Assembly: GCF_022045235.1 (NCBI RefSeq)
Contig: NW_027266286.1
Span: forward strand, 8,246,001 to 8,310,000
Origin: Haliotis cracherodii
Lineage: Eukaryota
Direction of reading: 5' to 3'
Length of the DNA stretch: 64,000 nt
Every line of letters begins with the position of its first letter. The stretch's first letter is position 1. Below are positions 11,302-55,472 of the stretch, piece by piece. A program made the translations under genes and the position numbers. The notes under the pieces are model-generated. The model was not told the DNA's origin and did no database searches. It was given only the letters and a program-made list of their open reading frames with translations.

Positions 11302-12348
11302 GTACAAGAACAAACTCATGAATAGACCTTTCTTTCACGAGGAGATCATGTGCTTGTCATCATGAGGTTCAGTTCAGTGGACCAAGGGTTATCATAGTAC
11401 TCAGGTCATTTATCACTTGTAGTCAGGTAAGAACTGTGGGTTTCATCCATTATTGTAGGACAGGATGCATTTCAATAGAATATACAGCCAATCAAGCCAT
11501 TGATAATTGTTAAATAATCCGTATGTGCATCACAGAGACAACAAGTTTGTCCTACCATAGGGTGAAGTACCGATGAATGTAATAGAGGACATACACATTT
11601 ATATCAAATGTCCAGGTCTTGTGAAACTATAAGAATGTTCATTCAATATCATGTAGAAGAAGCCGAGATCACAATTAAATAATGAAAGCTAAGGGATGCC
11701 AACATACTTGAGGGTTTGGTTGAAACACCATAACCAATGGGGTTGTTGTAATGTAATGAGTGTAGTATAATGTTCCTGATGTCCATGTTGAAGACATTCC
11801 ACATGGAACCATTCAAATACAAGCTGGCCTTGATACAGTGCAAATTAAGTACATTGGATAGTGCCAAGAAAACGTCAAGGTACTGTCTTTTGTATGAATA
11901 AACAACACATATCCAGTATTCTACAAGCACTCTCTTCTAATTTGTACACTGCCAATGAAAGTTTTCTGATTTTCTTTCATTTCATTGGACTGCAAAAGGT
12001 ACCATGAGCTCTTCAATCAGAAACACATCCTTCTTCCACGGGAGGTGATATCTAGTTCTCCCTTGATCATTTCTTCAGACATGGGATCTCGCTTCTTTGA
12101 AGGCTTTCTACAGCATGCCACACAAAGCTTTAGTTGCCCCACAATTATGACTTTAAAATACTGTTCAAGTATACTGTTAATGTGCACAAAGGGGACTCCA
12201 AGTATACTGCAATGGTACTGCACAAGTATACTCCAAACATACGCCATCAACTCATACACGGAAGCGGTGGTGCCCAGTTGTACATAATTGCTTGCTGCCT
12301 GTGTTTAACATATAATTTGAATCCTATATACACTAGAACGAGCCTCCA

Positions 12349-12602
12349 TCATACCATAGAGACCTTCTGACACCGAGGACTCTCTTGAGTCTTCTCCTCC
12401 ATGAGGAGTCTGTCTGTTGTGTTGCACCCTGTCGGAGCAGACACATATCTTACTTCTACATGATCATGATCAGGAGGAGTCCTTTCTGAGCGAAATTTCC
12501 GTCGGTGGTAAAATCCACATATTAAAAGGATGATACAGAAAAATGAAGATATGGACGTCCCTATGGCTATGTGAAGAATCTGTACCCCGGCTGTAGTTGG
12601 AC
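12349..12602 (-). CDS. Terminal coding exon: TM helix (ILHIAIGTSISSFFCIILLICGFY), basic stop-transfer HRRK, cytoplasmic tail ending KVSMV*
   Basis: Acceptor aattccag. The first bases GT complete the sixth LDLa Cys (TGT). Hydrophobic helix followed by basic residues. Confidence 0.88.
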
Positions 12603-15600
12603 CTGGAATTGACATAGACATTGTTGGTCAGTACTGGCCATGTGATTTCAATATTAATTCAAAGTCAAAATATTATGCACATGAAAAATAATCAAGATTA
12701 TGCATGACTGAATTGGTCTTTATGTTATCCTGTTAATATAAAATAATATAACATTTTTAACTGGTTTTTATATACTGATTTTCGATAAATAAAAGAAGTA
12801 TAGAATATGTACAAAGTTATTTGTGTGCAATAAAGGTAACACATTTTATCCTAAATGGTCCAAGTAAAGCCTACGGACCAAAAATGTAAAACCTGTAAGA
12901 ATGATCATCTGAAATTAGGATGTGAAATCTGTAAATGGAATTTGGGTCTTGCTGAAAACAAAGCCATGCATTAGAACATACTGCATATCTTCCATGACAT
13001 ATGTACCAACCTGCCATGTACCAGCACTACTATTTTCAGTGACAAGGTATTTTATTTTGTGGAAAATTTCATGCCAATTTGATTATGACACTTTGACATT
13101 CTGAGCAGAAAACTTAGAATTTAGATCATAACCACCTAGTGAATGCCATAGTCAGCAATATTCAAGCTACATCAAGGCAACATGTAAATAATGAAGTCTG
13201 GACCGTCAACATCAGCATAGGGTCCATGCCACCTGGGTACTATGACACATAACCAGTCACAGCCCGAGAACCATCAATTCCAGGTAAGTCTCCTTTCATA
13301 ACCAGTAATAGGGTGCTGAGATATATTCTAACCTATGTCCTCACAGGTATCATAACCAATTATTTAATCCTCTAAATTTATGTGTGTGTCACTATTAAGA
13401 ATCTAGTAGTGACTTGTTGGCACATGTGTCATGGTTCGTTCACAATCATGGTTATCATAAGAAGCAAAGGCAGTTAGGTTTACAGGCAGTCCTTTCATTC
13501 CAATCACATTCCTGCAGACTGTTGACATCCCCTAAACTACACATGCAGCACTATGATCATCTTCATAATGATGTCAAACTTGTTTAAACAATCCTCATAT
13601 TTCTCAGTGAATGTGAATGTATATAATATAACAGAAGTGTATTTGACATGAAATAGTTAAGGTTGTGAGATTGTGAATATTTAATGGTGCAGTCAGCCAT
13701 ATCACTTATACAGCCATATCAAAGCAACCAGTTTGAAATCAAGGCTGGACCAGGCAAACCATGTCCAGAGCTTGAGCAACAATCCTCATGTAGTAGGGTT
13801 TCAAGTTGGAATCACAATCAGTCAGATGATGGTTCAGTATTGGGCTCTGCCTATGGTGGCTATCTGATCATAATTCTGTTTTATCTTTTTGAAGTCCTTC
13901 TGCCTTGGGGGCAAATTGTGAATATACAGGGCATTAACAGACCAGTGCGTGAAGTACTTGTGGCTATATGAAATCAGGACCAGTCACTTGCCCACATTCA
14001 GACTACAAGTTAATGTATCGGTGACAATGAACTACTTCAACTGTAGGACAACCTTTGAATCCAATAATATTCAAAAGCTGTTGGGTATTTTCTGTTACTG
14101 ATGAGGTTTCAATATAATTTAAAACAACAATGAACATGTTAACCATATTGACTGAACACATGTTATTTCAGCATGCAACAACCATGACACAACTCGGAAG
14201 CCCAAGGAAGTGGGGCAAACACCATGGTAGTATACTGCTGGCGGAGTCTCCAGCTGTCATTGAGGGAACAATCTACCAGTGTGCTGACAATTGTTGAAAT
14301 ACAGCTCTACTTAGCTGATGCATGACTTAATAATGGAACAGAAACTTTAGTTTGGCTGCTATTTGCTTCACAACATCCACAGTTACCATTAGTTATTGAA
14401 GTTATGATCTGGTACAACAAATGTCAAAGGGTGTATTAATTAAGTGACTCTTGGGCTGAAGATAATCTCTTCTGCTCTTCCTAATGAGTAGAATTGTTTG
14501 CCTGACTGATGCAGTGTAATTACTATGTATTACGCTGAAGTCAGCAATAGTTTAACTATGTCATGATGGTCTGTAAATACTCAATTCTGGGTAAGTAAGA
14601 CTATCCAATGAGGTAAAATGACACAATCATCTTGGCTATAAATTGTGACCACTTGACCCTTATTGTGATGTTTGCTCTTGAGATAAGCATGGGATCCTTG
14701 GGACCTATTTAAGCCCTGAATGCCCACAAAAGATAATATTGTGAATATATACTAGATATTAGTCTGCTGTTTTTCCTGTATATCAAGTACACAAGTGAAA
14801 AAACATCACAGACTGTCATGTTGTCAGATGGTCACATAGATTCCCCTAACAAACTCATTGTATCCTGAGATCAATGAACATTATCAGACTGTTGTTCTTA
14901 GGTTCTTTACAGAGAAATACTTGTTTTTCTAACATGTTCTTTGTTTACCGCCTAACATCACATCACAGGTTACTTTCATTGTGTCATTACATTCATGTTC
15001 AAAATATCATAGGAATTTCTCTGCTAGATGTAGAAAAACAAATATAATACCAACAAACACCTAACTTAACCTTCCATTCTTCCCATGTATAAAATATTCA
15101 AGAATGAGGTAAAACCTGCACAATGCCTATGTATTAGTATTTGAAGTATATTTTTCAACAATTGTCATAATTATGCATTGTTTTTCTTCAGAAAGTTGAG
15201 TGTTGAGGAGTTGAACAGGAGGGAGAGCAGGGCAGATAGAGATAAGGTTACATACCATGGGACCCTTCACGGTTCAATATATATACCGTGCCTGATTAAT
15301 GGAAAACAAAATGCATTGGTGGATTGGCATGCACATGACGTATACACGCTAACGCTGAAGCATATTCCTGTTTCCCTCAGCCACAGCACTGACTGGCATA
15401 GTTACGTCCACCCAACTTGCAGCATGTTTTTGTATTGCCTTGTGTCTGGATAACATGTCAAACTGATGACACCATCTTGCACATTTTTGTATTGCATGTC
15501 AAACTGATGATATCATTTTGCACATACTGCATCGCAAAAACTTGCACTGCATATCAAAAATTAGATTATTGCATATAGAAAATATGTTGAGGTAACAGCG

Positions 15601-18600
15601 AGTTTGAAAATATCTATTAGTAATAACTGTTATTTGTTCAAAATGTCAGTAATTAAGTGGTTGACTAATACCTCAAGTTTTATTTATTGAAGACAGGATG
15701 GAAGTATTCTTGGAATGAGGATTAGACACTATATTTATATCTCTGGAAGAGGAAGGACACACATAAATTGTGTCTGTTCTGAAGGACCTCTTCATTGCCA
15801 ACTCTGAGTCACGAATGTAATCTATTCTAAGTTTGAAGAACAATGTTATCATAATCTCTCATCTTAACAAGTGGTTCATGCATAAAACATCCTCTTCATC
15901 ACATCAAATTACCCATATTTATCATATATTGCTACATAAAGCTCAGACAAAATGTGATTCACATCCAGATGACAATAATGATTAAGAACGATCAATAAAT
16001 CCCACAAATTCAATTTGTCAAGACATTAAATTTACTTACAATTATGACCTATTCATTACACAAGATGAAATTTTCAAACATTCCAAAACAACCTTACTAG
16101 GAATAAAATCACTCGTGCATGACCAATAATACCATTAACTAATCTCCCTAAATTGTCACTGTTTGAGTTTTGTTTTTGAAAGTCCAGATTTGGTGTTGGT
16201 GTGACAATACAACTGCAGCTGCCCTGTTGGCTCCTGATGCAAGTATGCCAGTCAGCACTACAGCAGGAAACAGTATGCCCATTCCACCTACCTCAATGTA
16301 AAATAAAATGTGTGAGAAAAAAGGAGTGACAAGTCACACTGAACACAATGACGGCGTGGAAACTCAACATTGATGGTGCTCCGCCTATATCCATGGAAGA
16401 AAGGAAAATAAAATAATACAAATTGGATAGGAAAATACAAGTGCCCATCAGTTTCAATAATTGCATATGAAAGTATCCTATTAGTTCTTGAACCTCTACC
16501 AATGTTGATGCTGTGTCACAATCAGACTATCTTGTCACTCAGTTTCAATTTCCTTAAATGATATGTGAATTTGCTGTTATGTTTATCATATTCAGATTTT
16601 CTTTGAGAACATCTCTCAAAACATCCCTCTTTGAAGACCTACAATCTACCAGTGTGTATTGTGGCTTAAGTTGGACCCCATAGGAACTGTAAAGATTTTT
16701 CATTAAATTTTGTTTTTTTTAATTAAACAATTCAAAATTTTAAACTGATTTATGCCTACCATTTTTCTGTTCTTTAAACAGTTTACTAAACATATCTGGT
16801 TAGGCTTGAAATAATAAAGTAATCTTTTCTCAGGCAATGGCTTTTGAAAATATAGTGTGGGCTGTTGGTGTTTTTTAAATTTTATTTTTGGTAGTTCAAA
16901 CTCGTATGTAACCAAACAAACAGATGTGTAACCAAATAAACAGTTGTGGGAAAGGGCTTCTCTACATGAATGTAAAATACTGAAATACAGTCGGACTTGG
17001 AATATTTAAGGATTTTTAAAAAAAAATTGAAAAATGGAAATAAAAATAAAACATGCGGCACACTTATGATGATGCAGGCGGTGCCTGAGAACCAAGACTA
17101 TTATTATAGACTTGGTTTCACTCCTCATCACAGACGTACTGCAGTCTGAATTGGACGGAAAACGAGAGGTGAGACTTTATTACCCAAATATGCATTAAAA
17201 CAACAACGCCCCTGCCCGCCCACTGCTACCCTGTGCCTATATGGTCGACATCAATCAGAAGAATGATCAATGCACATAGTCGATGTCAAGATAATTACTA
17301 ACAATATTCAGTTATTTCAGTTGATATTACAATTACTTTTGTCCTGTAGTATAATATTTAATGGCTACTTTCCAGCCTACTTTAACACAAAGGTGAGGAC
17401 ACAGTCAATAGAAGTACTGACAGGACAACTGGTAAATCAGCTGTTCAGTATCAGCACCCACTGTTTGATAATTTAAATTATGTATTATGAAGTGAAATTT
17501 TTGCCAACATTTTCTGATTGTGCACTTCTATTTTCATCCCCAAATTAAACAAAAACTGAATATTCTGAGCCGAACAACACAATTTGCATAACCAGCTGAA
17601 ACAAAGAAGACAAGGTGAGCATCCAATGTACCCTGTGCAACACAGCAGTGCTCCCTATATGTACAGGAACACACACTAGCAGTGGTGAAGCAGATGCTGC
17701 TCAAAGATGATTCCCTACTTTCAAATTACAAAACATAAAAAGATCTTGTGTCACAAAACAACATAACATATATGCAATTGTAACTGTCTTAACAGGACAA
17801 CTTAGGACAAAGATCAAATAACAGTTGACTAAAACCAGGGTCTTCTCCAATGAATGAAAACAGACGAAGTGAAAGGGTTAAAGTCACAGTCACGAAAACA
17901 TGACATTCCAAAACAAAACCCATAAATCCTGTCTGCTAGTCCAGGTGTATGTTTCAGTATGGACAGGCTATAACATTGTTTATATGCCAAGCAGAGTAGC
18001 AACATAGTCACTGTTTTTTACTGATCTATTCATATGGTTCTTTCATCACAAGTTTTTCCTAACAGATATTGGAATCTTTTTCAGGAGATGAAAGAGACTG
18101 ATTGTTTTCTGGTGTCAATATTGCCTCAATATTGTAGCATTTCTTATTTTATTTTCTTCAGAGTCAAATTGGGCAAAAAAATTCTATTCTTCTAAAGAAG
18201 ACATACCTTCATATCAAAATAACAAAGAGTGGTATATTGCTTTGATCTCTGCGTTTTGTCTGAACACTTATACCTGTACTTGAATACACAGTGAATTTTA
18301 AGGTTTTGTTTCTGAAATCTTCAGTCTTGGTGTACAAAAATGATCCAATGGTGGTATAGTTACTGTCAAATGTGACCTCCTATGTTAAGATCACAGACCT
18401 TTTTTACCTTTGCAGCTTACCAGAGCACATTATACAGTATTAATACATGTGCAAATGTCACTCTAACATACAGTGCACTGTGTGTCTAGTTAGTCATGAA
18501 TGCATCCATTGGCATACATCCAGAATGGATCGCACAAATGCATCAAACTGATCAGATCCCTGCGTGCACATTTCCATGTGCACTGATGTATCTACACCAG

Positions 18601-21600
18601 GCGGTCAGCAGCATGATACTGACTGTTCAATCCTTTCTAAGTTTGTACAAATAGCACCTAAGAATCAAAATAAGTCTATGTGTGGATAACAAACCAACTA
18701 TCACGTGTCTCTACCATGATGGCTACAGCTACTCTGCTCCAAAATCATTTCTCACATAATGTACTCTCCCACAACTTGGTTGCAATGAGATACTCAGTTC
18801 ATGGTGGAAGGGAGACAACTCTGTCCAACTTACATTCGGCTGTCTCGTCTGACTCATCACCTCGGCCACAGTTGGGTAATTCATTGCACTTCAATTCAGA
18901 CGATATGCAATAGTTGTTTTTAGCACACTTAAAACCAAAGCAGGTATCTGAAACAGAGTATATAAAAGATTCACATCTGAACATAGAAAGTTGACAATAT
19001 TATACATATCCTTGTGGATCTGGCATCACTTTTCACATACAAGGGCATCAAAAGGTGTTGTGATTTAGCTTGAGGAAGTGTGTGGGGAAAAAGCTTCGAC
19101 ATGTTGGCATATTCAGACACTAATTTGTTTTCAGAAGCTTCCATCATCACAAATATTTGTACAGCACCGATTGTGACATCATCATATTCCTTGTACATAT
19201 ATTTATTATATATGTGTTATGTATGTTTCACTGAACCCTTCACCATAATGGACGGAAAACCTGATTGCAAAAATATCTCTACTCAACACAAGCCTAAACT
19301 ATCAAAATAATGTTTCAAAATACTGATAAATATATATATACATGTGTATCGTTACATCTGTAGTGCAAGCAGATCTAGTTGCTGGGCCATAATGCCCAAA
19401 GTTATACTGATGCCCATTACAATAACAACTGCATAGCAGTCTACAGATCTAGAGTTACATCTTCTATCAACTGCCCTGGGGAATGACACTTTAACTCACA
19501 ACTGAACTAATTCTCAGCAGGAAACAATTGTTTCACAAACATGTTATGTCAACACTTACCATCTTCATTGACTTCTGTCCATGATAACTTGAATCCTTTA
19601 CCACCAAGTGACCGAAGTGATGTCACAAATCTGGAACAGATTAAGTCCAGGTGAACTTTTTGTCAATCAAATACATGTATAGGTATCAGAATGAGAGATT
19701 GTTATACAGCAAGTGTGTCGTACTGATTTTATGAAAAGTGTCAGAATCCTTATATTTCCTGAGCAAGAGCAAGGGTAATGCATGAATTTTTACACAAGTT
19801 TAATAAAATCAGTGTAACACACATGAGTGTAATTTCATTATTGTTTATTATTTCTTCCTTCTTTTGAACTCCTCTTTAGAGCAAAGCACTGATCATGACC
19901 GTCATCTAAGAAAACCACAATTATCGCATGACATCAACAATCTTCACCTACGACATCATTTCCAGTGTGAAGTCACTCCAACATTCCGAAACAATACACT
20001 GGTGTGCGTGAAGTGTTTTTTCTAACCCTATGGGTGATAAACAACAATATGTAATCATACTTTGTGCAGTGATTCTAAGCAAATCAAACTGAATGAAATA
20101 ACACATAGAAAAGATGCTGTAAAATGCATGTAACTGAGTTAAACACTACTTTGAACCGTATTCAGTCATATGGTAGCTAAATGTGCAGACAAGCCCAACA
20201 TGGTACATAAAGTAAACCAATACAACTAGACATGGGTATTGTGATGACAAACCAAGGATCATAATCACTTCTGGGTTTTCAACGCATATCAGTTGATCCT
20301 GGCACAGCTAAGGGACATAACTCAATAGTGACCCTGCAATTCACTCTTGAGTTGTATCCCTTAGCTGTGCCAGGATCTACTGATATGCATTGAAAAGCCA
20401 TATGTAAATACCATATGTACCTGCCACATTAAGTGCCTATACTTGAGTTTAAGGGTGTCCAGTTATAAGACAGAGAAATAAAGACTCACACCCAAAGCCG
20501 GAATCTGGTCTTCCTCGATACCTACACAATCCTGGTTATACATTAACTCTATTATCAAAAGTGAAGTAAAAGCTTGATCCCTTACGTTATTCTAAAAGTG
20601 TCCCCCGAAGAGAGGAAAGCTATATTAGTGCCCATCTGGCCACACAGCACCTCGGCAGGCTGCACAGAGTTGATATCACTGTATATTCTCATCACAGAAT
20701 TCTGGCAGCCCGTTTCTGAAACATAAAGGGTTAATCTTCTGCATTTGTTATGAAGGAGCTTCCTTCCACAAGAATCAATTTTCTATCTGAGCAAAACTTG
20801 TTGAAGTAGATAAGTGAGTGAGAAAGTATGGTTTTATGATGCAGCTTTTAGCAATATGCGGGAATAATACACACTATTTGACAGGTTTTGGTTTGTTGTT
20901 TAATGCCGCACTCAGCAATATTCCAGCTATATGACTGCGGTCGGTAAATAATCGAGTCTGGACCAGACAATCCAGTGTTTGACATCATGAGCATCGATCC
21001 ACGCAATTGGGATATGATGACATGCATCAACCATGTCTGTGAGCCTGACCACCCGATCTCGTTAGTTGCCTCTTTCCACAAGCATAGTCACCTTTTACAG
21101 CAAGAATGGGTTACTGAAGACCTATTCTACCAGATTTTACAGGTACACAAATTCAGAGGATTCAGAGAAGATGTTGAAAATCTAGTTAAACTGGACAAAT
21201 GGGGTACATGAAGATCAAAAGGGGAGAGCAGGATAGTAAAATTCAAATACTTGTACACAAAAAACATTTTTTACTGCATACAAAATATCAAATATCCTAA
21301 TGATACATGTAAACATGTTTGACGAGTGGGCAAAAACTCCATTTCCAGTATGATTGATGTGTTCATAAAGAATGGACAATTCAGGTATACTTACGGTCCA
21401 TCTTTCCTTCTAACACGAAGGTAGCTGTTTCTAGGAGTATTTTATTTGTGGGTTTACTGGCTCTAATCGTCCACTGACAAAACGTCTTTGCCTTGTATTT
21501 TCGAGGATAGTCAGGACTTTTTATTATTCCTCCCGATCCCTGACTGTTTATTACATGCTTTCCACATTCTGAAACAGGACAATTGATAGGTAACAGAAAA

Positions 21601-21742
21601 CAGCAGGCACCAATAGAAGCCTTAATGTGTGTGTGTGTGTTGAGTGTGTGTGTATTTGTGTGTGTGTGTTACATGCTTTCCACATTCTGAAATAGGACAA
21701 TTGATAGGTAACAGAAAACAGCAGGCACCAATAGAAGCCTTA

Positions 21743-21781
<39 letters not shown>

Positions 21782-24700
21782 ATGCTTTCCACATTCTGAA
21801 ATAGGACAATTGATAGGTAACAGAAAACAGCAGGCCCCAATAGAAGCCTTAAAGTATGTGTGTGTGTGTGTGTGTGCGTGTGTGTGTGTGTGTGTGTTAC
21901 ATGCTTTCCACATTCTGAAACAACAGGACAATTTATAGGTAACAGAAAACAGCAGCCACCAATAGAAGCCTTAATGTGTGTGTGTTGTGTGAGTGTTGAA
22001 AGTGTGTGTTGTATGTGTGTGTTATGTTTTGTGCGTATTGTGTATGTGTGTATTGTGTTATGTGTAATGTGTGTGTTTCATGTGTATGTTGTTCATGTGT
22101 ATGCGTGGTGTGTATTATGTTGTGTGTAATGTGTGTGTGTTGCATGTGTATGCTGTTTATGTGTTGTGTTGTATGTGTGTGTTGTGTGTATTGTGTGTAA
22201 AATTCTCTTCCCAGAAGCAAATAACAATTCATGCAATCCCCGAGTCCAAGGGTCAAGGTTATAAGTATTGTCTGAAGTTGATATTGCTGATGAGCATTGA
22301 AAGTTAAAGACTTGAAAGTCCAAAGTACACCTTATCAGAAAGTATATTACTCAAAATAAAACAAGGATCACCTGATTATTTCATGTTACTTCAGTTCATC
22401 GGTCAGGATGGCATGACAGATGAACTATAGTCACATGAAAGAATCGAGTTTTTTTAGTTGTACAGTAAAATAAGTTTATAACTAACTCACTTATAACGGA
22501 CTGACGGATATTACAAACTTAATTCTTGGTCCCAGCCATGTGCTGTATTGATGTTGCATATATGCTTATAACGAATTGCGGTTTTAACAAACTAAAATTA
22601 GTGGTCAATTTGAGTTTGTTATAACCATAGTTTACTGCAGATATAATGATTCATTCATCTGACAATCAGTTCAGTGTGATGCATGTGTATGAACCTACTT
22701 CCATATATCTCCTCCTTTGTTTGGAAGTAGTATCTGGCCTTGAAGCCCATCTTGGTAATGGATTTGTTGGAATGGAAGACAATCTTCACCACCCTTGATG
22801 ACGTAAAAGGGCCAGGAGCTATTGTGCCACAATGCCTCTCCACAAGGGAGAAGTTATTTTTGGTATATCCCTCTTCCAGAATCTCCAGGTAGTCTCTTCC
22901 CAGGCACCTGTAATGTATGAAAGCAAGACATTCAGTCTGTGGCTTCAAGTGATGCTACTGTATTGGGGTAAACTTCAATTTGCCAGTATCCTCATCTCAT
23001 CAGGAGGAAATGAAGTTTGTGGCTTAAAGAGATGCTACTGTATTTGGGTAAACTTAAAAGCTTTCAAGTGCCAGTATCCTTATCACATCACTTTATTATT
23101 GCCAAAGGGTCAAGAGCTAAGGGACCAAGGTGACAGAAGTTGATATACAGAGATGCATACCTTAGCTGCCAGGATCACTTTCACCCTATCAAAGAACATT
23201 TTCACCCTATCAAAGAACACTTTCACCCTATCAAAGAACACTTTCACCCTATCAAGGAACACTTTCACCCTATCAAGGAACACTTTCACCCTATCAAAGA
23301 ACACTTTCACCTTATCAAAGAACACTTTCACCCTATCAAAGGACACTTTCACCCTCTCAAAGAACACTTTCACCCTATCAAAGAACACTTTCACCCTATC
23401 ATCCCAAAATAAGATTTTCATTACTTCACAAATCTGGTAAATCTTAAAATTTGTTATCAGTTGTTTGAAGTTATCAGGTAACTTTTAATACATTTTTACA
23501 TTTGAAGCATTTATTTCACTTGAAAGACAATTTTATCCATGAGATCACTTAAGAAACCAGATCGGAGAGATACTTTTACTCATGTTTTTATTTCACTTGC
23601 AAGATAATTATTTTTATGAGATGACTAAAAAACCCAGACCTGACTGTTTTGGAAAATAATTTGTAAACCAAGTAATTAAAACATATAAAAAATAGTACAA
23701 TGGCACTGTAGCTCACTTGGATATGTAGTCAGCAGTTTGAGGACTAACAATAAACTTTAATGATTTGAACAAAATATGATGTCACCATCATGAGAAACAT
23801 ATATGCCAAGTTCAACTCCCTGAGTCTTACTATTTCAGGAGAAGACATTTTCAGAGCAAAATGTGGATTTTGTGAGCACGAGCCATGTTGTAAGTAAACG
23901 GAACTTGTGTACTGAATCCCACAACAACTAAACAAAGTCCAAATTTCATTCAAAATTGGCGCTCATAAATAGGTTTTACAAAATGTCTGCCTCCATGGCA
24001 GCCAAATTGAAAATCAGATTTGAACCTTTGAACAAATTGGGGGTGTCATGGCTGGTACAAACAAGTATGTGAAGTTTCAGCTTCACTGGTTCAGATGACA
24101 AACAAACAGGTCATGACTTTCAGTCAGGTGAACAAGATGACAAAGGGACAGGGTTAGTTGGTTCACACACCCCAGCTGGTTCGGTTGTCTTGCATCTAGA
24201 TCAAATGTATCGAATGATATCAGAACGAAGACGTCATGGCCAGGGCGGAAGATGTATTCACAGGTGAGATCGGTCGGGTAGTTGCCAGGGTGACGTGGTG
24301 TATTGAATGTCCCAGACTGGCCACTGGTGTCATCATACAAGAACTTGCACTGGCCTTCTGAGATGGGAGTCCCTGGGATTGCATAATCTGGAACAAACAG
24401 AAGAAATTATTCTGAAGATGACAACTACTTTGAGAAGACAGTTTTTACACTGGATGAAAATGTGTCGTGTTAGTTTTAAAGGTGAGTTTTAAAGGTGAGC
24501 AAATTAATTGTGTACTTACTATTTTTTATCCATGGCAATAAGGTATCTATTCTGAATGATTGAACATGTTTGAAATAGTTCATGTGGTGATTAGAGACAG
24601 ACTTCGTCAAATTTTCTACAGTGTTTACTACAGGTGGATAAGGAGGGGAATGTGTGCCTCCTTTTTGAATTCCTGGTAGCAAATACATAACACTAGAGGA

Positions 24701-27700
24701 TTGAGTAAAAGATGAAAGGTTTGTATTTGTTATTTATAGCTGCAGAATTAACAGATTGGACCAGAGTGTAGACTGACCCTCTGAGATCTGGGTCCCTGGG
24801 ATTGAATAATCTGGAATAAAAAGAAGAAATTATTCTGAAGATGACAACTAATTGTTAATTACACTGAAAGTAGAGAAGTCTACAGTCAACCCTTGTTTAG
24901 TCCACTTGATCTCCATAACAGAAATACAGAAAACTACATACTGTTGTTTGGTGCTGATATAATCTGGAAGTATTCAAGAATACTATAGATACACTAACTG
25001 TCCCTGAATCACACCATGGAGACAGAATGATGGTTTAACTAGATCACTTCTAACTGGATCGACTTGATCAACCTAACACACAAATTGTGAACTGGAATTT
25101 AACTGAAATATGATTGAATGAAGAGATGTGAAATTCAGCTCGTTTTTCAGCATGCAAAAGGTATTCATAACAGTCATCTATTTGATCACTGACATGTTGT
25201 TTGTGATAGGAAAGTTGGAATACTGATCAGGAAGTACATGTGGATGAGTATATCTACAATTGAATTGACCCTTGAATTGCAACACAACAAGGGTTGACTG
25301 TATGGCATTTGCCAAGAGGCATGTCATGTAGGCATTGAACATGCAACATCACATTTCCAAGTTTTTATATTTACTTATTTCTATTTGGTACAATACAAAT
25401 CTTCAATAAATTGTTCAGCTCAGCTAATACTTCTGTCATGAAAAAACTAGTACAAACCTGATTCCATCTTATTCAATCCTCTTATGTTAAGTATTAAATA
25501 TCTTAAATAAAGATACTGAACATATCTGGCCCTAAGCACTACCATTCAAACAACCATATTCCAAACATGTTCAATCCTTCCAACAGATACCTGGACTCAC
25601 ATGGATAAACATGTCAATGGATTTGCAGAAAGAAAGTCTTGTCAGTAGGTGTCTCCTACACTAGATTGCCTACCTGTAATAAACTTGTACTTGGACATGA
25701 AGCGCCCGCCTTGGACGGCCCCTCGAGTGTCCAGGGTCAGGACTAGACGGGGACCTTGACTCGTCAGAGGTGGGGGTCGCAGTGTCCCGCAGAATTTCTC
25801 CTTCACAGTTCCATCCTTCAGGCGACTATCCTCATTCAGACCAACATATCCAAGTGCACAACTGAAACATTATTTACATATAGTCCAATGTATTGTCATA
25901 AGAATAACATTGTGCATGTGTATGGAGTGAGTGAATGAATGTTGATTTGCAGTCATAATCGTCCAGATATATCCCACCAGTCTAAAGTCTGCACTGTGCA
26001 GACCAGATTTGACTATAGGAGCAATAATCCAGATATATTCCTCCAGTCTACAGTCTGTACCATGCAGACCAGACAACACCAGCAATAATCCAGACAACAC
26101 CAGCAACAATCCAGATATATTCAGCTAGTCTATAGTCTGTAGCATGCAGACCAGACACCAGCAATAATCCAGATAGATCCTTCCAGTCTATAGTCTGTAC
26201 CATGCAGACCAGACAACACCAGCAATAATCCAGATAGATCCCTCCAGTCTATTGTCTGTACCATCCAAACTACACCAGCAATAATCCATATATATCCCAC
26301 ACATCTATTGGCATTACATGACACACAGTCAGTCAGCTTGCACATTGTGACCACCCAACAATCATTGGTTGAATCTTGTGATAAGCTTAATTGGGGTACT
26401 GGTGACCTATTGCAGAATTCTGCCAAGCCTCAAATGTACACCATAAACATATCTTGCTCATATGCTTTCCAAAACTTCTGACTACACATCCAGGTGAGTT
26501 ACATTGCTCACATTGCTACAGTGACAATATATTTTTTTCTATTACTATGATCACAAACTTCTGAAAATGTGTAAAGAAATAAAACAAACATCTGTAAAAA
26601 ATATACCATTCTGTTTCAACTGAAAACATAAAATGACACATCTTAGCCATCTGACACTGTTGCAAAGAGTGATAAGGTCAGAACAACTAAAGAAATATAA
26701 CATGAGATTTTGAAGGAAAACTGTTTCAATATTTGTAGTATGTCTTAATAGATAATAGATATCCAATAGAACCTAACAGATGATTTGTGCACTGCGTCAC
26801 TGGTGTCTTCTCTACTCGTCCACTACAGGTATCAATCAAACAACAAACCTTGCATGTCCACAACTTACTAAGGCATATTCCCTGGTATGTCGAAGTCGAA
26901 GAATAATATCCTAGCTTTCTCCAGATGCTGTCTGTCCATAAGGCCATCCAGGTAGTACCGACAGGTGATGTTTTGAGGGAAGGAGGCCGGATAATTGGGG
27001 GACTTTATTGTGCCATTGGTCTCTTGCTTACTCATTATTCGTTGGTCACATTCTGCAATGATATAAAAAACAAGACATATGAATGTAGTCATGGCAACAG
27101 CAGTGGCGCCTTAGACTAAAAATATAGTCTCCGAAATGAAAAGACTGAAAGTTGTTTTTTCTTCAAATTGTTTAAAAATTTATAACAGAAAGGAGCCAAG
27201 AGAATCTTTCACATTCTGAAACTGAAGAAATCAAGACTTGCATATTTTTGCTTTGGGGTCAGAGAGACTAGCTGTACCTATACTTTAATATGCTACAGTA
27301 TTTCTAAGAGAAGACATGCTCACCAAAATTATATTTTCATCAATTTTGTCATTATCTTCTGAATGTCACCAACACATTATCAATGAAAGGTACACCCAAG
27401 CCCTCATATACTTTGTCTACATCAGACAGTATCTCATGTCTGCTTTCAGAACCAATTGCTTTTAGCTGAGCTACTTTGAGTTCAATAGGTCACACAAAAT
27501 TGTGATTTTAATACTATTTCTGATGTGAAAAAGATTAATACTTGATGTTTAGCTACAAACCTCTTGATGTTTCTATTAACTTCTCGTTCTTTCCACTTAC
27601 ATTATATCAATATTTCCAAAGAGGAAATAACCTAAATTTGTTAGTCTAGTAACTTGTGTCATAATTCATGAAACATAAGTTCTTTTCGAAACCCATGTCT

Positions 27701-30700
27701 CATGTATCCCACAACTACTTAAGTTAATGTGTCCTTAACTAGTCATCTTTGGACATATTATGTTCTCTGTAAGGGGCGGTATTACTATAGTCGCAGCAGT
27801 AAGACAATCTTAACTCCCATACTTTAACACAGACTTACAATAGTCGTAGCACTAAGACAATCTCAACTCCCATACTTTAACACAGGCTTACAATAGTCGC
27901 AGCACTAAGACAATCTCAACTCCCATACTTTAACACAGGCTTACTATAGTCGCAGCACTAAGACAATCTCAACTCCCATACTTTAACACAGGCTTACTAT
28001 AGTCGTAGCACTAAGACAATCTTAACTCCCATACTTTAACACAGACTTACAATAGTCGCAGCACTAAGACAATCTTAACTCCCATACTTTAACACAGGCT
28101 TACAATAGTCGTAGCACTAAGACAATCTCAACTCCCATACTTTAACACAGACTTACAATAGTCGTAGCACTAAGACAATCTCAACTCCCATACTTTAACA
28201 CAGGCTTACAATAGTCGCAGCACTAAGACAATCTCAACTCCCATACTTTAACACAGGCTTACTATAGTCGCAGCACTAAGACAATCTCAACTCCCATACT
28301 TTAACACAGGCTTACTATAGTCGCAGCACTAAGACAATCTCAACTCCCATACTTTAACACAGGCTTACTATAGTCGTAGCACTAAGACAATCTTAACTCC
28401 CATACTTTAACACAGACTTACAATAGTCGCAGCACTAAGACAATCTTAACTCCCATACTTTAACACAGGCTTACAATAGTCGTAGCACTAAGACAATCTC
28501 AACTCCCATACTTTAACACAGACTTACAATAGTCGTAGCACTAAGACAATCTCAACTCCCATACTTTAACACAGGCTTACAATAGTCGTAGCACTAAGAC
28601 AATCTCAACTCCCATACTTTAACACAGACTTACAATAGTCGTAGCACTAAGACAATCTTAACTCCCATACTTTAACACAGGCTTACAATAGTCGTAGCAC
28701 TAAGACAATCTTAACTCCCATACTTTAACACAGGCTTACAATAGTCGCAGCACTATGTCAATCTTAACTCCCGTACAGTACTGGGGACCGACTCCGACCT
28801 AGAATCACTTCCGAGTTGCTCCATTAACACACTGCCACCTACCTGTTCCTATTAAGTGTTCTGCATCAGGTAGGATAAAGTCTGAAATAGAAACATTTGT
28901 TTCTTCTACAATTTGGCAAATATAGAAATGATCATACTTAGTAGTAATGTGTAAGAAAGTAGTTAGAAAAAACATGCAGAGACTTTATCCACGGTCTTAT
29001 CCATTTCAATATGAATGAATGAATGAATGAATGAATGAATGAATGAATGAATGAATGAATGAATGAGAGAGCGTTTCATGCTGCTTCCAGCAATATTTCA
29101 GTAACATCACAGCAGGGCTTCACGCATTGTATCCATCCTAGAAATTCAAACCTTGGTCTTTGGAGTGATATTAACTTCAACCACTACTACAACATTATAT
29201 GTTTGTTGTGTAACACCCAACTCAGCAATATTCCAGCTAGTTGATGGCAGCATGTTAATAATCAAGACTCGACCAGACAATCCAGTGAATGACATTGTGA
29301 GCATCAATCCACATACATCAGGGTTCAGTGACACAATCAACCAATGACCACCTGATCCAGGGATTTCCGTATTTCAGTGTAAAACAAGTTTATCTACTAC
29401 AGATTGACTGTGCAACTGATGTGCCTTTCACTGCATCAAGGCACATGTTTATACTTGGTTAAACATTGACATACTTACCTAACTTGACAATCTGATCACT
29501 GAAGTTATACGTTATGTTAAATCCTTTTCTTGGCACTGTTAAATCACCACTGTTTTCAAGAGGCTGCTTGTCAAACAACACTCTCCCTTGACTTGTAAGA
29601 AACTCTATGTGCAGTGCTTCTCCAGAAGAGTAAAGAATTGTGCTATTGTCATAGTTGCCACAGAACGTGCCAATCACAGGGGCATCATTTGTATAGCCAT
29701 CGTAGATTTTCACGTAATCGTATGGACAACTGGAATACAAAATGTCCATCTTCATACATGATCTCACAGGAACACAAATACATAGAGATCCTTAGCCTGA
29801 AATATTATATTTTATTCATCAACATAAGATGGCTAATGAAATATGGTTTATTTCACGATGAAACATTGTTCTATTATGATGTTATTTCTAGAAATTAAAA
29901 CATACACTCACAATCGATCGGTATTGGAAGAATATGCGGGAAATACCAAACTTAGCCCACCTGTTCATGAAATAGACTTGTCTGACATTGCCAAGGTCAG
30001 ATTTAGGGAATCATCATTATAGCTTGTACATTTAATTACTTCCTTAAAGAGGCTGTATATAATGTTGATATCTCATATAAGAAATAAACAACTTGTGGTC
30101 ATTTTTTTATTGTACAATAGTTAACTCCCATTCATTTATTTTTTAAGTAAAGATGTTGATATATATATATATATATATATAAATAATCTTCTGAAAGACC
30201 TCCAAATTTCTAGTCTTTGATCAACATTTAATATAAGTTGGCAGAACATGAAGACATTTAACTTGTATGGATAACAACTATTGTCTGTAGCCACATTTCA
30301 GGGATTACTGTTGTAGCTATGGAAGATGACTCAGTACCTAGAAAGGTGCAAGCCCTGCAATGCTGCTACAAACAATAAAGAAGTTATCAAGGAAAGTTTC
30401 ATGTCTTCATCCCAGTTTCTAACTACCTTGCAAAGACCCAAAGCGACTACAGTGCATTTCTGTATATATGATTATACCTAAAAAAAATACAAATATGACA
30501 ATCCAGAAATATGTTTTGTGTTTTGCAAGTTCTTCAATTGTAAACCATATATTCTGTGTCTGTTTATGTGGTACCAGTTATTTGTTCATCAGGCAAATAT
30601 ACAAATTCTATGAATATGTTTAAACCCTGTAAACTATGTTGTGCCCCTAACACATTCACACTGAGAACAAGGCACAAAAGATAGCACTACTGCTTTAAGC

Positions 30701-33700
30701 TCTCATAAAATATTTGGTGCACTGTGCACCCTTCCATCAACACTCACTCTTGTCTCTTGGGAGGTAAAATCAAACTTGATCAACTTTTGAATCAGATAGA
30801 TTGTCCTTTCAAGACTTAAAATGTTAAAATTGAATGTCACAATGTTGCTTCATAAGAAACAAACTAAAGATATAGTGCATTTACCCTGAATTAATTTCGA
30901 ATTCAAATGTAGTTAAGTCTCTCAAGACGCTTATCAAATGGGTGAATCTGATACCCAATTGATTCCAAACGAAAGGCAAAAAACATTACAGTTCAAACTG
31001 TTATTCCCTGAAGTATCACTGAAAACAGTAAAGCGTAACGCGAGTCTCTCAAAGAGCCTTCCCAGGAGATACATCCAGTCAGAGTAATTGCAAGTAGTTT
31101 GTGCATCAGGTACCGCATCACCTGAGCTTGTACAGAATAAAAAAGTGTCGCTCATATTCCCAGGCCATCTGTAACTAGCACCAGAATCCATGAACTTACT
31201 ATTCCTCTCCATGGTAGAGGGAGAACTCGATGAAGTGGAGTTTGATCCTCTCCCCGGCCTTGCCCTGCAGCTTGTAGTAGCAGAACATGTTGTCTGCATA
31301 CATGCCGGGGAATGTAGGGGACATGATGAAACCCGTCTTCCTGTTCTCGCTGCGGATGGTGTAGCCGCACATGGCTGGTGGCGCCTCTGTTCCTATATCA
31401 TATACTGCTGGAATGGGGAAAACTGTTAAATCAATCCATACAGTCTAGATTCTGTTAGTGGGTGAAGATACTACTGTGTTAGGGGGAAGAAATAATAAAA
31501 AGTGTCTTTTGTAAATGTCATTTAACTGTATATTTTCAGTTCAATTCAGATTGCATTTTATAAGTTACAGGCTTGAGAGTTATTTTGGATGACATTTTCA
31601 ATTATTGTGGCCAGATGAAAAAAGCATACATAAACTTACATGTATATACTTACAGCGCAAATACTATTAATTATTTTCTTAATTTCTGAATTGCTGTAAG
31701 ATATTACGTGAAAATGATGTTGAATTGAGAATCGTACAATTGTCAGTCATGTTGTCAAATTCTGGAGAAAGCACCAAAGTACTGAAGCTCACCTGGTACA
31801 TGTGCCTCCATAATGCATTCATAAATTCACATAGTTGACTTGAAATTTTTCATGTACAGTTGTGATGTTTGGGAAACTAAGCCATTGAGTGAAAGTGTTG
31901 CTATTAAAACACTTGCAGTATAATAGGATCTATTCACAACGGGCTGACAGAACCACATCACTACAGTCAGCAAGACAACACAGAGTGGTGCAGATGAACC
32001 ACATACATGCCCTGGTTCCTGGCTTTACACTTACATCACAGTGAGCCAGCCAGAGTTTCTTGTTCTACTTCAGTTTCAGCATTAGCCAAGCCATATCACT
32101 CTGCATGGTTTCAAAAATTATTCCAGTCTGGGTTATCAAACCCAAATTTTGGCATGTTGATCCAACACTCTCTCCACAAGGCCTCCCCACTGCCCCTACC
32201 TACACTTAGTCATTTAGCTGATCAATATCAACCTAACTTATTAAATAATTGTTAAACCAAAACATAATGCCAGATTTCACCTCTTTGATACTGTCAACCA
32301 ACCAGTTAACCTTCAACATTGTAACTTAATCTGCAACAGTATGTATAACACTGTTAATGAGCAAGGTCAAGGTGGAAAGTGTCAACTATAAAATATAAGT
32401 AACAAACAAAACATATATGTTGTACCACCTTCACTATCTACAGACATAGATGACTAGGCTTTCAAATGATGGGTTGGCAGCAATACTTAATTATGGATCC
32501 AGTAAACGAGGACATCATCCATGGAAAGGTCTATGCCATGTTTCAGATGAGATGCTGTCTAATATAAAATGTTAAAGCCAGAGAATAACCTGTCTCAGAA
32601 ACAGATTCCACAGGCTGTAAAAGTCAAAATTGCACTGCAAATTATATTTATATATCATTGAAAACCAGTGGCGACACCAAGTGTTCATGAAAAGGGTAAG
32701 CATGAACACAATGGACAACAGACAAGCACACCACAATCCAAGCTCACTAGACCTTTAGCCAAGGTGAGCCAAAAACATGAATATGAAACCTTACCATTCC
32801 ATTAAGGATATCTGACACTCTTTTCCAATATAACACAGGGATTAATGGATGACCAGAATTATGAAACTACTGACACATATCAATTATTAGGAGCACTTCA
32901 CATCACTCTGGCTTGGGAAAGTAGTGTTGTTTGAGTCAATGATCACACCATTAGCACATCTATTTCATCTTATAGGATACTGATTTTGCTAACCAAATAG
33001 TTTTGGTCGGATGAAATAAGAATATAATAATAAATTTGAGTAGCTCAATATTTTATTGTATTGGGGGGAACTTGTATTGGGTTGGTCTATTTCAGGAAGA
33101 AAATCTTTTTATAAAGCAGGATGTCCAGTATTTTGACGGTAACCTTTTGATGTATTCCGTTCTGTGAAGGCTTATCTTAATAATAGACTACATACAATGC
33201 ATTCGATCAATTATTATATGAAAAAGGTAATAGTTACTTCATTTTGTATAATTTTTGTCAAATTTAATAATACTTCAAATGAATCACAAAAGAAGTGGTC
33301 ATCACGTAAAAGTAAACTGAAACTTTTTTAATCTTATTTCTTCAATGTTGTCTGAACTCCCGAAGTCAACTCCATAAACTCAAAACTTAAATGAGTGCTG
33401 CCAAAGCCAACATCACAGTGTCTTCTGCATGAACAAATTATGTGTGTACATGAACATTAGCCATATTGACCTTAAACATGAGACCAACGGAACTTTCCCT
33501 TTTCTGTAGGTATTATACATAAGTCACTCCATCATGAAAGTCTCATACATATATTCAGGCTAATTTAATGTATTTTCAAAATGACAACTTAAATGGGTCA
33601 GTGTCAAATTCAATACTAAAAGAAAGAATTTTTTTTGGTAAAGAAATGAATTCAAGAGATTAATTTTCAAATGCTGTTTGAATAAAAAGCTATTCTAAAG

Positions 33701-55279: not shown

Positions 55280-55472
55280 CTGAAACCGAGGGAAAAATAA
55301 CATGAGAACTAACAAACAAACCATACAGTGCAAACAAGGTTTCTGTAAACAGTATGCCCATTTCAGCTGTCCACAAGTCAAACACTGCTGCACACAGAGA
55401 ACACCAAACTGACTAACAAAAACATCTGCTTTTTGAAATCCTTACATACTTATTTTACTGTCAGTGTTGGTC

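What the first reader, a model, noticed from the sequence alone, without database searches (positions are those of the whole stretch)
16292..16384. Hidden cassette exon that would switch the protein from TM+PDZ tail to a GPI-anchor-like C-terminus
Seen: the LDLa exon ends with a lone T, the first base of the sixth Cys codon. Two downstream exons both complete it: the TM exon (T|GT) and this 93-nt segment (T|GC). The segment has a strong pyrimidine tract, a tag acceptor and a G|gtaggt donor. It encodes C-G-A-P-S followed by a hydrophobic, Lys/Arg/Asp/Glu-free tail (MLSFHAVIVFSVTCHSFFLTHFILH*). Established: small residues plus a terminal hydrophobic stretch is the GPI signal pattern, and a stop 1 nt before the last junction escapes EJC-type NMD. 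Inference: one gene yields both a scaffold-coupled TM form and a GPI-linked or releasable form of a putative ionotropic-receptor auxiliary protein. The exon length is a multiple of 3, so TGA read-through would stay in frame with the TM exon.
Basis: partly seen in the sequence, partly recalled or inferred. Interest (0 to 1): 0.8.

Follow-up and report, generated by a model that had tools for sequence, protein, structure and literature searches.

The report
Real splice switch to GPI-like tail
The 93-base segment is a genuine alternatively spliced exon of an abalone gene related to the worm receptor-clustering protein LEV-10, and it replaces the membrane-spanning tail with a short greasy tail that looks like a lipid (GPI) anchor signal.

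Summary
On the minus strand, 16384..16292 has an AG acceptor and a G|gtaggt donor. It completes the split sixth LDLa cysteine and ends in TGA 1 nt before the donor.

- **RNA evidence:** a 2,291-nt contig of run X8 joins this segment directly to the TM exon with no mismatch. A contig of run X11 skips it.
- **Not hidden:** the window's exons translate at 100% to Haliotis cracherodii RefSeq isoform X4 (cassette tail) and X1 (TM form).
- **Gene family:** 5 CUB + LDLa + TM, collinear with C. elegans LEV-10.
- **Conservation:** the same switch, directly after the sixth LDLa cysteine, appears in database models or transcript contigs of 15 named mollusc species. It also appears in several arthropods and nematodes, and in C. 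elegans lev-10 (906-aa TM form, 840-aa hydrophobic-tail form).
- **Tail character:** the sequences diverge but keep small residues, then a hydrophobic run, then the stop.

GPI attachment itself is untested. No paper in the held library mentions a LEV-10 GPI or short isoform. The scan had two earlier notes on this gene, neither on this exon.

The parts
18834..18947 (-). LDLa exon. It encodes ..TCFGFKCAKNNYCISSELKCNELPNCGRGDESDETAE and ends with T, the first base of the sixth Cys codon. Donor gtaagt at 18833.
   Evidence: sequence; tblastn of P0104 residues 736-774 at 18948-18832, 100%. Pfam Ldl_recept_a at 19.1 bits, below the 24.1 cutoff.
12603..18833 (-). Phase-1 intron of 6,231 nt between the LDLa exon and the TM exon (GTAAGT...CAG). 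It holds the cassette.
16292..16384 (-). Cassette exon of 93 nt. It supplies GC of the Cys codon, then GAPSMLSFHAVIVFSVTCHSFFLTHFILH, stop, and one more base.
   Evidence: sequence. X8 record 24 lies on 16290-16384 and is contiguous with 12100-12600, 0 mismatches. P0102 residues 775-803 at 16382-16296, 100%.
16293..16295 (-). In-frame TGA stop, 1 nt upstream of the cassette's donor.
16385..16420 (-). Acceptor region: pyrimidine-rich tract (75% C/T at -22..-3) ending atatag.
16154..16481 (.). Longest stretch (327 nt) without any difference among the four genomic copies of this region. It holds the cassette with 138 and 97 nt of flank.
   Evidence: With 91 difference events placed at random, a gap this long arose in 138 of 20,000 trials.
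12349..12602 (-). TM exon. It supplies GT of the Cys codon, then PTTAGVQILHIAIGTSISSFFCIILLICGFYHRRKF...CQKVSMV and the stop. It is coding in the TM form and 3' UTR in the cassette form.
   Evidence: P0104 residues 775-857 at 12600-12352, 100%; contigs of X8 and X11 run on to 12100 and beyond.
19552..55319 (-). Upstream coding exons (five CUB domains). Approximate tblastn blocks: 55319-55095, 36184-35966, 31420-31202, 29728-29480, 27062-26844, 25860-25675, 24811-24779 (33-nt micro-exon), 24388-24143, 22906-22670, 21569-21393, 20722-20585, 19629-19552.
   Evidence: Block ends are alignment ends, not verified splice sites.

Best explanation
The segment is a real cassette exon of the abalone orthologue of LEV-10. 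LEV-10 is a type I protein with five CUB domains, one LDLa domain, a TM helix and a C-terminal S-x-V motif.

When the exon is skipped, the LDLa exon joins the TM exon. The protein is then membrane-spanning and ends in ..KVSMV, a class I PDZ-ligand pattern.

When the exon is included, it completes the sixth LDLa cysteine, adds 29 uncharged and mostly hydrophobic residues, and stops 1 nt before its donor. The TM exon then becomes 3' UTR. The product has the whole ectodomain but no cytoplasmic tail.

Inferred: the tail is a GPI-attachment signal. The candidate omega triad is C-G-A, 29 residues from the end, followed by a spacer and a hydrophobic run. Cleavage and exchange for a lipid anchor in the ER would give a form that is uncoupled from PDZ scaffolds and more mobile or releasable. 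This two-tail design is old. It is present at the same position in nematode (including C. elegans lev-10), arthropod and mollusc genes.
For: **Splicing**
- X8 record 24 joins 16384..16290 to 12600..12100 with 0 mismatches. X11 record 9 shows the skipping form.

**Gene models**
- P0102 = XP_071113787.1 (H. cracherodii X4, 803 aa) ends in the exact tail. P0104 (X1, 857 aa) is the TM form. Both match the window at 100% over these exons.
- H. asinina X3 keeps the tail at 26 of 29 residues, against 93.8% for the rest of the protein. The three changes are F>Y, A>V and V>I.

**Conservation of kind**
- Of 260 session proteins with a recognisable LDLa end, 54 have 50 or fewer residues after the sixth Cys. 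Of these, 45 have a hydrophobic 10-residue window (mean Kyte-Doolittle 1.9 or more) near the end.
- Molluscs: Patella, Gigantopelta, Littorina, Pomacea, Biomphalaria, a chiton, Tegillarca, Mytilus, Mercenaria, Ruditapes, Mya, and cephalopod transcript contigs.
- Arthropods: Belonocnema, Ampulex, Vespula, Artemia.
- Nematodes: Ancylostoma, Steinernema, Ascaris, Toxocara, and C. elegans lev-10 (P0256, 840 aa, against P0146, 906 aa).

**Family**
- 5 CUB stretches in P0102 and in LEV-10. They are collinear at 32% over 822 aa.

**Plausibility of a TM-less form**
- The LEV-10 ectodomain alone rescues AChR clustering, and soluble SOL-1 partly rescues sol-1 (passages of PMC9083331).

**Local constraint**
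- The cassette sits in the longest invariant stretch among the four genomic copies.
Against: - GPI attachment was not tested. No validated predictor was available, and my omega and hydropathy rules are recalled heuristics.
- The abalone tail is the least hydrophobic of the mollusc tails (best 10-residue mean 1.98) and carries four His. Its best omega candidate is the structural sixth LDLa cysteine.
- Only 1 of the 4 runs laid shows the cassette in the pieces listed, and 1,194 pieces were not shown. Contigs cannot give isoform ratios, and the runs are only guessed to be RNA.
- The 18834->16384 joint was not seen in reads.
- Some lineages show no such form among the members I read: Magallana gigas (40 of 118 members read), Crassostrea virginica, Dreissena and Octopus bimaculoides. 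Ostrea X5, some insects and one Mytilus model have short tails without a hydrophobic run.
- Many of the supporting proteins are automatic gene models.
- The peptide pattern alone arises by chance in about 19% of random introns.
Confidence: 0.6

Rival explanations
1. The exon is real and conserved, but the tail is not exchanged for GPI. It would act as a short membrane anchor without a cytoplasmic tail. Alternatively it is a degradation or retention signal, or it is clipped, so that the isoform is in effect a secreted or tail-less ectodomain.
For: The tail is 29 residues with His at four places and only moderate hydrophobicity. Several insects and one nematode model end 1-2 residues after the Cys, and one Mytilus model ends 3 residues after it, i.e. 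plainly secreted forms. Engineered soluble LEV-10 and SOL-1 ectodomains work.
Against: Tails in three phyla share small residues 20-30 residues from the end, followed by a hydrophobic run that reaches the very C-terminus without a basic stop-transfer flank. That is the GPI-signal pattern rather than a stable TM anchor. A purely secreted form would not need to keep about 25 hydrophobic residues.
Confidence: 0.25
2. The cassette is a regulatory 'poison-type' exon. Inclusion lowers output of the TM protein, and the truncated product has no role of its own.
For: It carries an in-frame stop and turns the coding TM exon into a long 3' UTR. Flanking intron sequence is invariant among the four copies, as is often seen for regulated exons.
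Against: The stop lies 1 nt from the last junction, which by the 50-55-nt rule (established for mammals; unknown for molluscs) would not trigger EJC-dependent decay. Across phyla the peptide's physico-chemical pattern is kept, not its letters. That points to selection on the protein. Between two abalone species the tail is as conserved as the rest of the protein and keeps its length and stop.
Confidence: 0.1
3. It is a chance pseudo-exon or an assembly or annotation artefact.
For: Such ORF tails arise in about 19% of random introns. The runs are only guessed to be RNA.
Against: There is an exact splice joint at canonical sites in a 2,291-nt contig. There is an independent RefSeq model. The same tail is present in H. 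asinina, and the same kind of tail is present in many phyla.
Confidence: 0.02

Closest known systems
C. elegans LEV-10 (acetylcholine-receptor clustering protein)
   Same: Five CUB stretches in both, then LDLa, then a TM helix. The two are collinear at 32% over 822 aa, E 5e-106. The lev-10 locus also has two database products that diverge directly after the sixth LDLa Cys: P0146 (906 aa, TM) and P0256 (840 aa, ending in a hydrophobic tail). Per the review PMC9083331 (passages), the ectodomain suffices for function.
   Different: The abalone and other mollusc TM forms end in V-S-[IM]-V. The worm TM form does not. No function is known in molluscs. The tails share no sequence.
NETO1/NETO2, Drosophila Neto-alpha/beta and C. 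elegans SOL-2
   Same: CUB + LDLa + TM auxiliary proteins of ionotropic receptors. NETO1 has a class I PDZ ligand. Fly Neto uses alternative splicing to change the C-terminal part (PMC9083331 passages).
   Different: These have two CUB domains, not five. The fly isoforms swap cytoplasmic domains and keep the TM helix. A GPI-type form is not described in the passages I read.
NCAM-120 versus NCAM-140/180, and Aplysia apCAM
   Same: One gene gives TM and GPI-linked isoforms by alternative exon use. apCAM is a mollusc precedent with one TM and two GPI-linked isoforms (PMC2132711 passages; NCAM papers seen only as listing and abstracts).
   Different: These are Ig-superfamily adhesion molecules, unrelated in sequence. 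Their GPI linkage is biochemically proven, whereas here it is predicted.
Soluble SOL-1 (s-SOL-1) and the truncated LEV-10 ectodomain
   Same: TM-less CUB ectodomains that still support receptor function (PMC9083331 passages).
   Different: Those are engineered constructs. Here the TM-less form is made naturally by splicing.

Membership tests
LEV-10 family | Five CUB domains | tested here: met
   Pfam CUB with 5 stretches in P0102 (E 1.4e-81) and 5 in C. elegans LEV-10 P0146.
LEV-10 family | One LDLa module next to the membrane | tested here: inconclusive
   PF00057 at residues 739-774 scores 19.1 bits, below the 24.1 cutoff. The six-Cys and D-x-S-D-E pattern is readable. Orthologues P0062, P0063 and P0070 carry PF00057 in the precomputed list.
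LEV-10 family | Full-length collinear similarity to C. elegans LEV-10 | tested here: met
   266 of 822 identical, E 5e-106, from CUB1 to the TM helix; a mollusc profile finds nematode proteins P0087 and P0088. P0088 finds P0146 at 61%. P0146 is named CELE_lev-10.
LEV-10 family | Type I TM helix with cytoplasmic tail (main form) | tested here: met
   read directly: a hydrophobic run ILHIAIGTSISSFFCIILLICGFY followed by HRRKFR. No TM predictor was run.
LEV-10 family | Clusters levamisole-type acetylcholine receptors | not testable with these tools
   Needs genetics or physiology.
Alternatively spliced cassette exon | Canonical AG acceptor and GT donor | tested here: met
Alternatively spliced cassette exon | Transcripts with the exon joined to the flanking exons | tested here: met
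   the downstream joint is seen in X8 record 24, and the piece ends exactly at 16384. The upstream joint itself lay outside the laid stretch. It is given by RefSeq X4.
Alternatively spliced cassette exon | Transcripts that skip it | tested here: met
   X11 record 9 ends its piece at 12602 and continues elsewhere. RefSeq X1-X3 are TM forms.
GPI-anchored protein (C-terminal attachment signal) | N-terminal signal peptide | tested here: inconclusive
   P0102 starts MYRFENKFVVWTNILLVCLSIGYVSA. This was read by eye; no predictor was run.
GPI-anchored protein (C-terminal attachment signal) | Small omega, omega+1 and omega+2 residues about 20-30 residues from the end | tested here: met
   C-G-A at 29 residues from the end. 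The rule is a recalled heuristic. G-A-P and A-P-S are disfavoured by Pro.
GPI-anchored protein (C-terminal attachment signal) | Hydrophobic run reaching the C-terminus, with no charged flank | tested here: met
   0 K/R/D/E and a best 10-residue mean hydropathy of 1.98. This is the lowest of the mollusc tails.
GPI-anchored protein (C-terminal attachment signal) | Positive call by a validated predictor; PI-PLC release | not testable with these tools
   No NetGPI, PredGPI or big-PI here, and no bench.
NETO family | Two CUB domains + LDLa + TM | tested here: not met
   five CUB stretches.

The most novel reading that the evidence does not exclude
LEV-10-type receptor-clustering proteins of protostomes (nematodes, arthropods, molluscs) carry an ancient splice switch in the intron that follows the LDLa module. 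One branch gives a TM form, which in molluscs and arthropods has a PDZ ligand. The other gives a GPI-anchored form. The lipid-anchored form would be a physiological, scaffold-free, laterally mobile or sheddable organiser of acetylcholine-receptor clusters. This would explain why the ectodomain alone rescues lev-10 mutants. It would also mean that C-terminal GFP knock-ins of LEV-10 see only one of the two forms.
Probability: 0.45. Interest if true: 0.75.

Novelty: new member of a known kind. Interest (0 to 1): 0.6.

Why it matters
LEV-10 is the founding CUB-domain organiser of ionotropic receptor clusters. It is described in the literature I could read as a transmembrane protein.

A naturally made tail-less and probably lipid-anchored form, kept from worms to abalone, would add a second mode of attachment to the model: free of PDZ or cytoskeletal coupling, and releasable. 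It is directly testable in C. elegans, where the b isoform already sits in the databases.

For the scan, it shows that a reader working from raw sequence alone correctly predicted a real alternative exon. As an exon of abalone it is not new, because RefSeq already models it.

Tried and rejected
- **Word-based protein search:** a search with the last 244 residues of the cephalopod short form gave only 3 proteins. A profile of 7 orthologues was needed.
- **NETO membership:** rejected, because there are five CUB domains.
- **TE-derived exon:** not supported. The 401 nt around the cassette has only 4 genomic matches, all copies of the same locus. The abundant repeat in the intron lies at 16827-17105, outside the exon.
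- **Chance pseudo-exon:** the sequence pattern alone is weak, but this reading is rejected on RNA and model evidence.
- **Literature:** searches for 'LEV-10B', 'LEV-10A' and 'lev-10 isoform' found 0 papers. The search 'LEV-10' + 'GPI' found 5 papers, 4 listed. Of these I searched passages only in PMC9083331, where the single GPI mention concerns uPAR, not LEV-10. The other three were seen as listing and abstract only. The search 'Y105E8A.7' or 'lev-10' found 52 papers, 15 listed, none on isoforms by title or abstract.
- **Papers I could not see:** Gally et al. 2004 (PMC3781939) is not held, so I cannot say what it states about lev-10 transcripts. Supplementary figures, such as S2 Fig of PMC7173930 on lev-10 gene structure, were not open to me and may show the b isoform.
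- **TGA read-through:** not pursued, as there is no evidence either way.
Full report
**What is in the sequence.** The gene lies on the minus strand.
- The LDLa exon ends ...GAC GAG ACA GCC GAA T at 18834 and is followed by gtaagt.
- At 16384 a segment begins after a pyrimidine-rich tract and atatag. It reads GC GGA GCA CCA TCA ATG ... CAT TGA G and is followed by gtaggt.
- With the T left by the LDLa exon, this gives Cys-GAPSMLSFHAVIVFSVTCHSFFLTHFILH-stop. The tail has 29 residues and no Lys, Arg, Asp or Glu. The stop ends 1 nt before the donor.
- The TM exon begins at 12602 with GT (again Cys). It encodes a hydrophobic helix, HRRKFR, and ends ...CQKVSMV-stop.

**Is it more than chance?** From the letters alone, only modestly.
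- Among the 258 AG sites in the 6,231-nt intron whose frame closes within 60 codons, this is the only one that restores Cys and yields a 20-45-residue tail with at most one charged residue and a hydrophobic end.
- However, 19% of 200 Markov-random introns contain such a site.
- The donor directly after the stop and the pyrimidine tract add to the case, but the decisive evidence is elsewhere.

**RNA.** I found runs with the TM exon (22 coded runs, all only guessed to be RNA).
- In run X8, contig record 24 (2,291 nt, minus sense) lies with record positions 1642-1736 on 16384..16290 and with positions 1737-2237 on 12600..12100. There are no mismatches. The 2-nt offset is the gt/GT ambiguity of the predicted joint 16292|12602. 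The piece stops exactly at the predicted acceptor, 16384.
- The first 1,641 nt of that contig lie upstream of the laid stretch, so the joint to 18834 was not seen.
- In run X11, record 9 (6,734 nt) ends its piece at 12602 and continues elsewhere. This is the skipping form.
- In X1 and X2, the listed contigs run through 12602 into the intron (unspliced). X2 record 21 crosses the cassette's acceptor unspliced.
- So 1 of 4 runs shows inclusion and 1 of 4 shows skipping in the pieces listed. A further 1,194 pieces were not shown, and contigs give no ratios.

**Gene models and species.**
- phmmer with the TM-exon peptide against 1.84 billion representatives gave 19 hits. A profile of seven orthologues gave 54.
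- The cluster of the Haliotis asinina hit holds H. cracherodii models.
- XP_071113787.1 (isoform X4, 803 aa, P0102) ends ...DESDETAEC-GAPSMLSFHAVIVFSVTCHSFFLTHFILH. XP_071113782.1 (X1, 857 aa, P0104) has the TM tail.
- tblastn puts P0102 residues 775-803 on 16382-16296 and P0104 residues 775-857 on 12600-12352, both at 100%.
- At two positions where H. rufescens differs (..EIYEEGY.. and ..KILIETA..), the window agrees with H. cracherodii.
- The window is therefore from H. cracherodii or a near-identical abalone, and the exon is already modelled. It is not hidden.
- H. asinina isoform X3 has the same tail with three conservative changes (26 of 29 identical, against 93.8% for the rest of the protein). 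Its length and stop are the same.

**What gene is it?**
- Pfam finds five CUB stretches and a sub-threshold LDLa.
- The mollusc profile reaches nematode proteins. One of them finds a C. elegans protein at 61%, which a source names CELE_lev-10.
- The abalone TM form and LEV-10 align collinearly at 32% over 822 residues, E 5e-106.
- The review PMC9083331 (passages read) describes LEV-10 as a type I TM protein with one LDLa and five CUB domains. It is needed to cluster levamisole-sensitive acetylcholine receptors, and its extracellular part alone rescues clustering.
- I therefore file the gene as a LEV-10 orthologue, not a NETO (two CUB domains).

**The same switch elsewhere.** This is the main addition. 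Alternative products that diverge exactly after the sixth LDLa cysteine, and end after a short hydrophobic tail, occur in the following.
- Gastropods: Patella vulgata X3, Gigantopelta aegis X3 (both also start C-G-A-P), Littorina saxatilis X2, Pomacea canaliculata X4 and X5, Biomphalaria glabrata X6 and X7, and B. pfeifferi.
- A chiton: Liolophura sinensis X2.
- Bivalves: Tegillarca granosa, Mytilus galloprovincialis X5 and M. trossulus X4, Mercenaria X5, Ruditapes X8, Mya X5.
- Unnamed transcript contigs of a cephalopod (tail GIGPVISEPLILGLSVLISISVGLILH, which also ends ILH), a caenogastropod-like snail, and a bivalve.
- Outside molluscs: the wasps Belonocnema, Ampulex and Vespula; Artemia; several nematodes. 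In C. elegans lev-10 itself, the 906-aa product has the TM helix and the 840-aa product ends ...ATSSSATVALTILIIVMLVLPAILCAH.

Counts:
- 260 session proteins had a recognisable LDLa end.
- 54 of them have at most 50 residues after the Cys.
- 45 of those have a strongly hydrophobic 10-residue window near the end.
- 9 do not: six end after 1-3 residues, and Ostrea X5 and two Biomphalaria models have polar tails.

No short form was among the members I read for Magallana gigas (40 of 118 read), Crassostrea virginica, Dreissena or Octopus bimaculoides. The counts include redundant isoforms and automatic models.

The tails share almost no letters between classes. They share their make-up: small residues 20-30 from the end, a short spacer, and a hydrophobic run to the last residue with no basic flank.

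The long forms end in V-S-I-V (58), V-S-M-V (31), I-S-I-V (19), V-D-S-V (24) and similar. This S/T-x-V pattern is conserved in molluscs and arthropods.

**Mechanism.**
- Shown: two mRNA forms, and two predicted proteins that differ only after the sixth LDLa cysteine.
- Inferred: the short tail is a GPI-attachment signal, and the sequence-free conservation of its pattern is what such signals show. The lipid-anchored form would keep the receptor-binding CUB ectodomain at the surface but lose the cytoplasmic tail and its PDZ-type ligand.
- The natural precedent for TM/GPI switching by splicing is NCAM. In a mollusc it is apCAM, with one TM and two GPI-linked isoforms (PMC2132711 passages).
- Engineered TM-less LEV-10 and SOL-1 ectodomains function, so a natural TM-less form is plausible.
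- I put the GPI reading at about 0.6, an unprocessed, secreted or tail-less form at 0.25, a purely regulatory stop-carrying exon at 0.1, and an artefact at 0.02.
- Against a purely regulatory role: the peptide's pattern is conserved rather than its nucleotides, and the tail evolves at the same rate as the rest of the protein between two abalones.
- Weak points: no predictor and no biochemistry; the abalone tail is the least hydrophobic of the mollusc set and has four His; its best omega candidate is a disulphide-bonded cysteine.

**Local genomic context.**
- The 401 nt around the cassette and the TM exon each occur four times on the same contig, about 101-106 kb apart.
- The 3.4-kb stretches are about 98.5% alike, and two of them are identical.
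- The longest stretch without any difference, 16154-16481, holds the cassette with its flanks. With 91 difference events placed at random, a gap that long arose in 138 of 20,000 trials. Other invariant stretches of 252 and 230 nt exist, so this is modest support for constraint on the exon and its flanks.

**Novelty.**
- As an abalone exon it is already in RefSeq. As a kind of event (TM/GPI switch by splicing) it is known.
- I could not find in print a link between LEV-10 and a GPI-type or short isoform, or its conservation across phyla.
- Searches: 'LEV-10B', 'LEV-10A', 'lev-10 isoform' gave 0 papers. 'LEV-10' + 'GPI' gave 5 papers; in the one whose passages I searched the GPI mention is not about LEV-10, and the rest I saw only as abstracts. 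'Y105E8A.7' or 'lev-10' gave 52 papers, 15 listed.
- The original LEV-10 paper was not available to me, and supplements were closed, so this absence is provisional.
- A C-terminal GFP knock-in described for LEV-10 (passages) would label only the TM form.

**Verdict.** Observation confirmed. Interpretation supported, except that GPI attachment remains a prediction and the exon is not hidden. Interest 0.6: ordinary as an annotation, but it opens a testable question about a well-studied synaptic organiser.

Noticed in passing
window 12352-12600 and 16150-16550; G000 contig C23 at about 8.15, 8.26, 8.36 and 8.46 Mb (L001-L004): The 3' part of the gene is present four times in tandem, 101-106 kb apart. 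The copies are about 98.5% alike, and two (L002, L003) are identical over 3,401 nt. RefSeq lists an N-terminally shorter 678-aa TM model under four accessions in H. cracherodii, and similar models in H. rufescens. This is either a real recent tandem duplication or assembly redundancy.
   Followed up: partly
window 16827-17105: An intronic stretch is covered by very many contigs in all four runs (summed depth in the thousands), with many loose ends and internal joints. It looks like an abundant, transcribed interspersed repeat.
   Followed up: no
window 24779-24811 (minus strand): A 33-nt micro-exon (acceptor ..ttattccag, donor gtcagt) encodes an 11-residue near-repeat of the start of the next exon. 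It is present in RefSeq X1, X2 and X4 and absent in X3.
   Followed up: partly
window 31391-31420 (minus strand): RefSeq isoforms differ here by ..DAFFPIPAVYDIG.. versus ..DASVYDIG.., an alternative splice choice at the start of the CUB2 exon. Similar variants exist in Patella, Littorina and Pomacea models.
   Followed up: no
window 21551-21975 (minus strand): Three near-identical ORF pieces flanked by (CA)n/His-Thr repeats precede the CUB5 exon.
   Followed up: no
proteins P0035/P0037 (Magallana gigas), P0051, P0052, P0284: Oysters use the same intron for a different event: a 13-residue in-frame insert between the LDLa and TM parts. Ostrea X5 stops shortly after that insert with a polar end and no hydrophobic tail.
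   Followed up: no
protein P0001 (158 aa): A database gene call on this very DNA reads through the TGA after ..KVSMV as Trp. This is a product of a caller using a TGA=Trp code on eukaryotic sequence, not a real protein.
   Followed up: no
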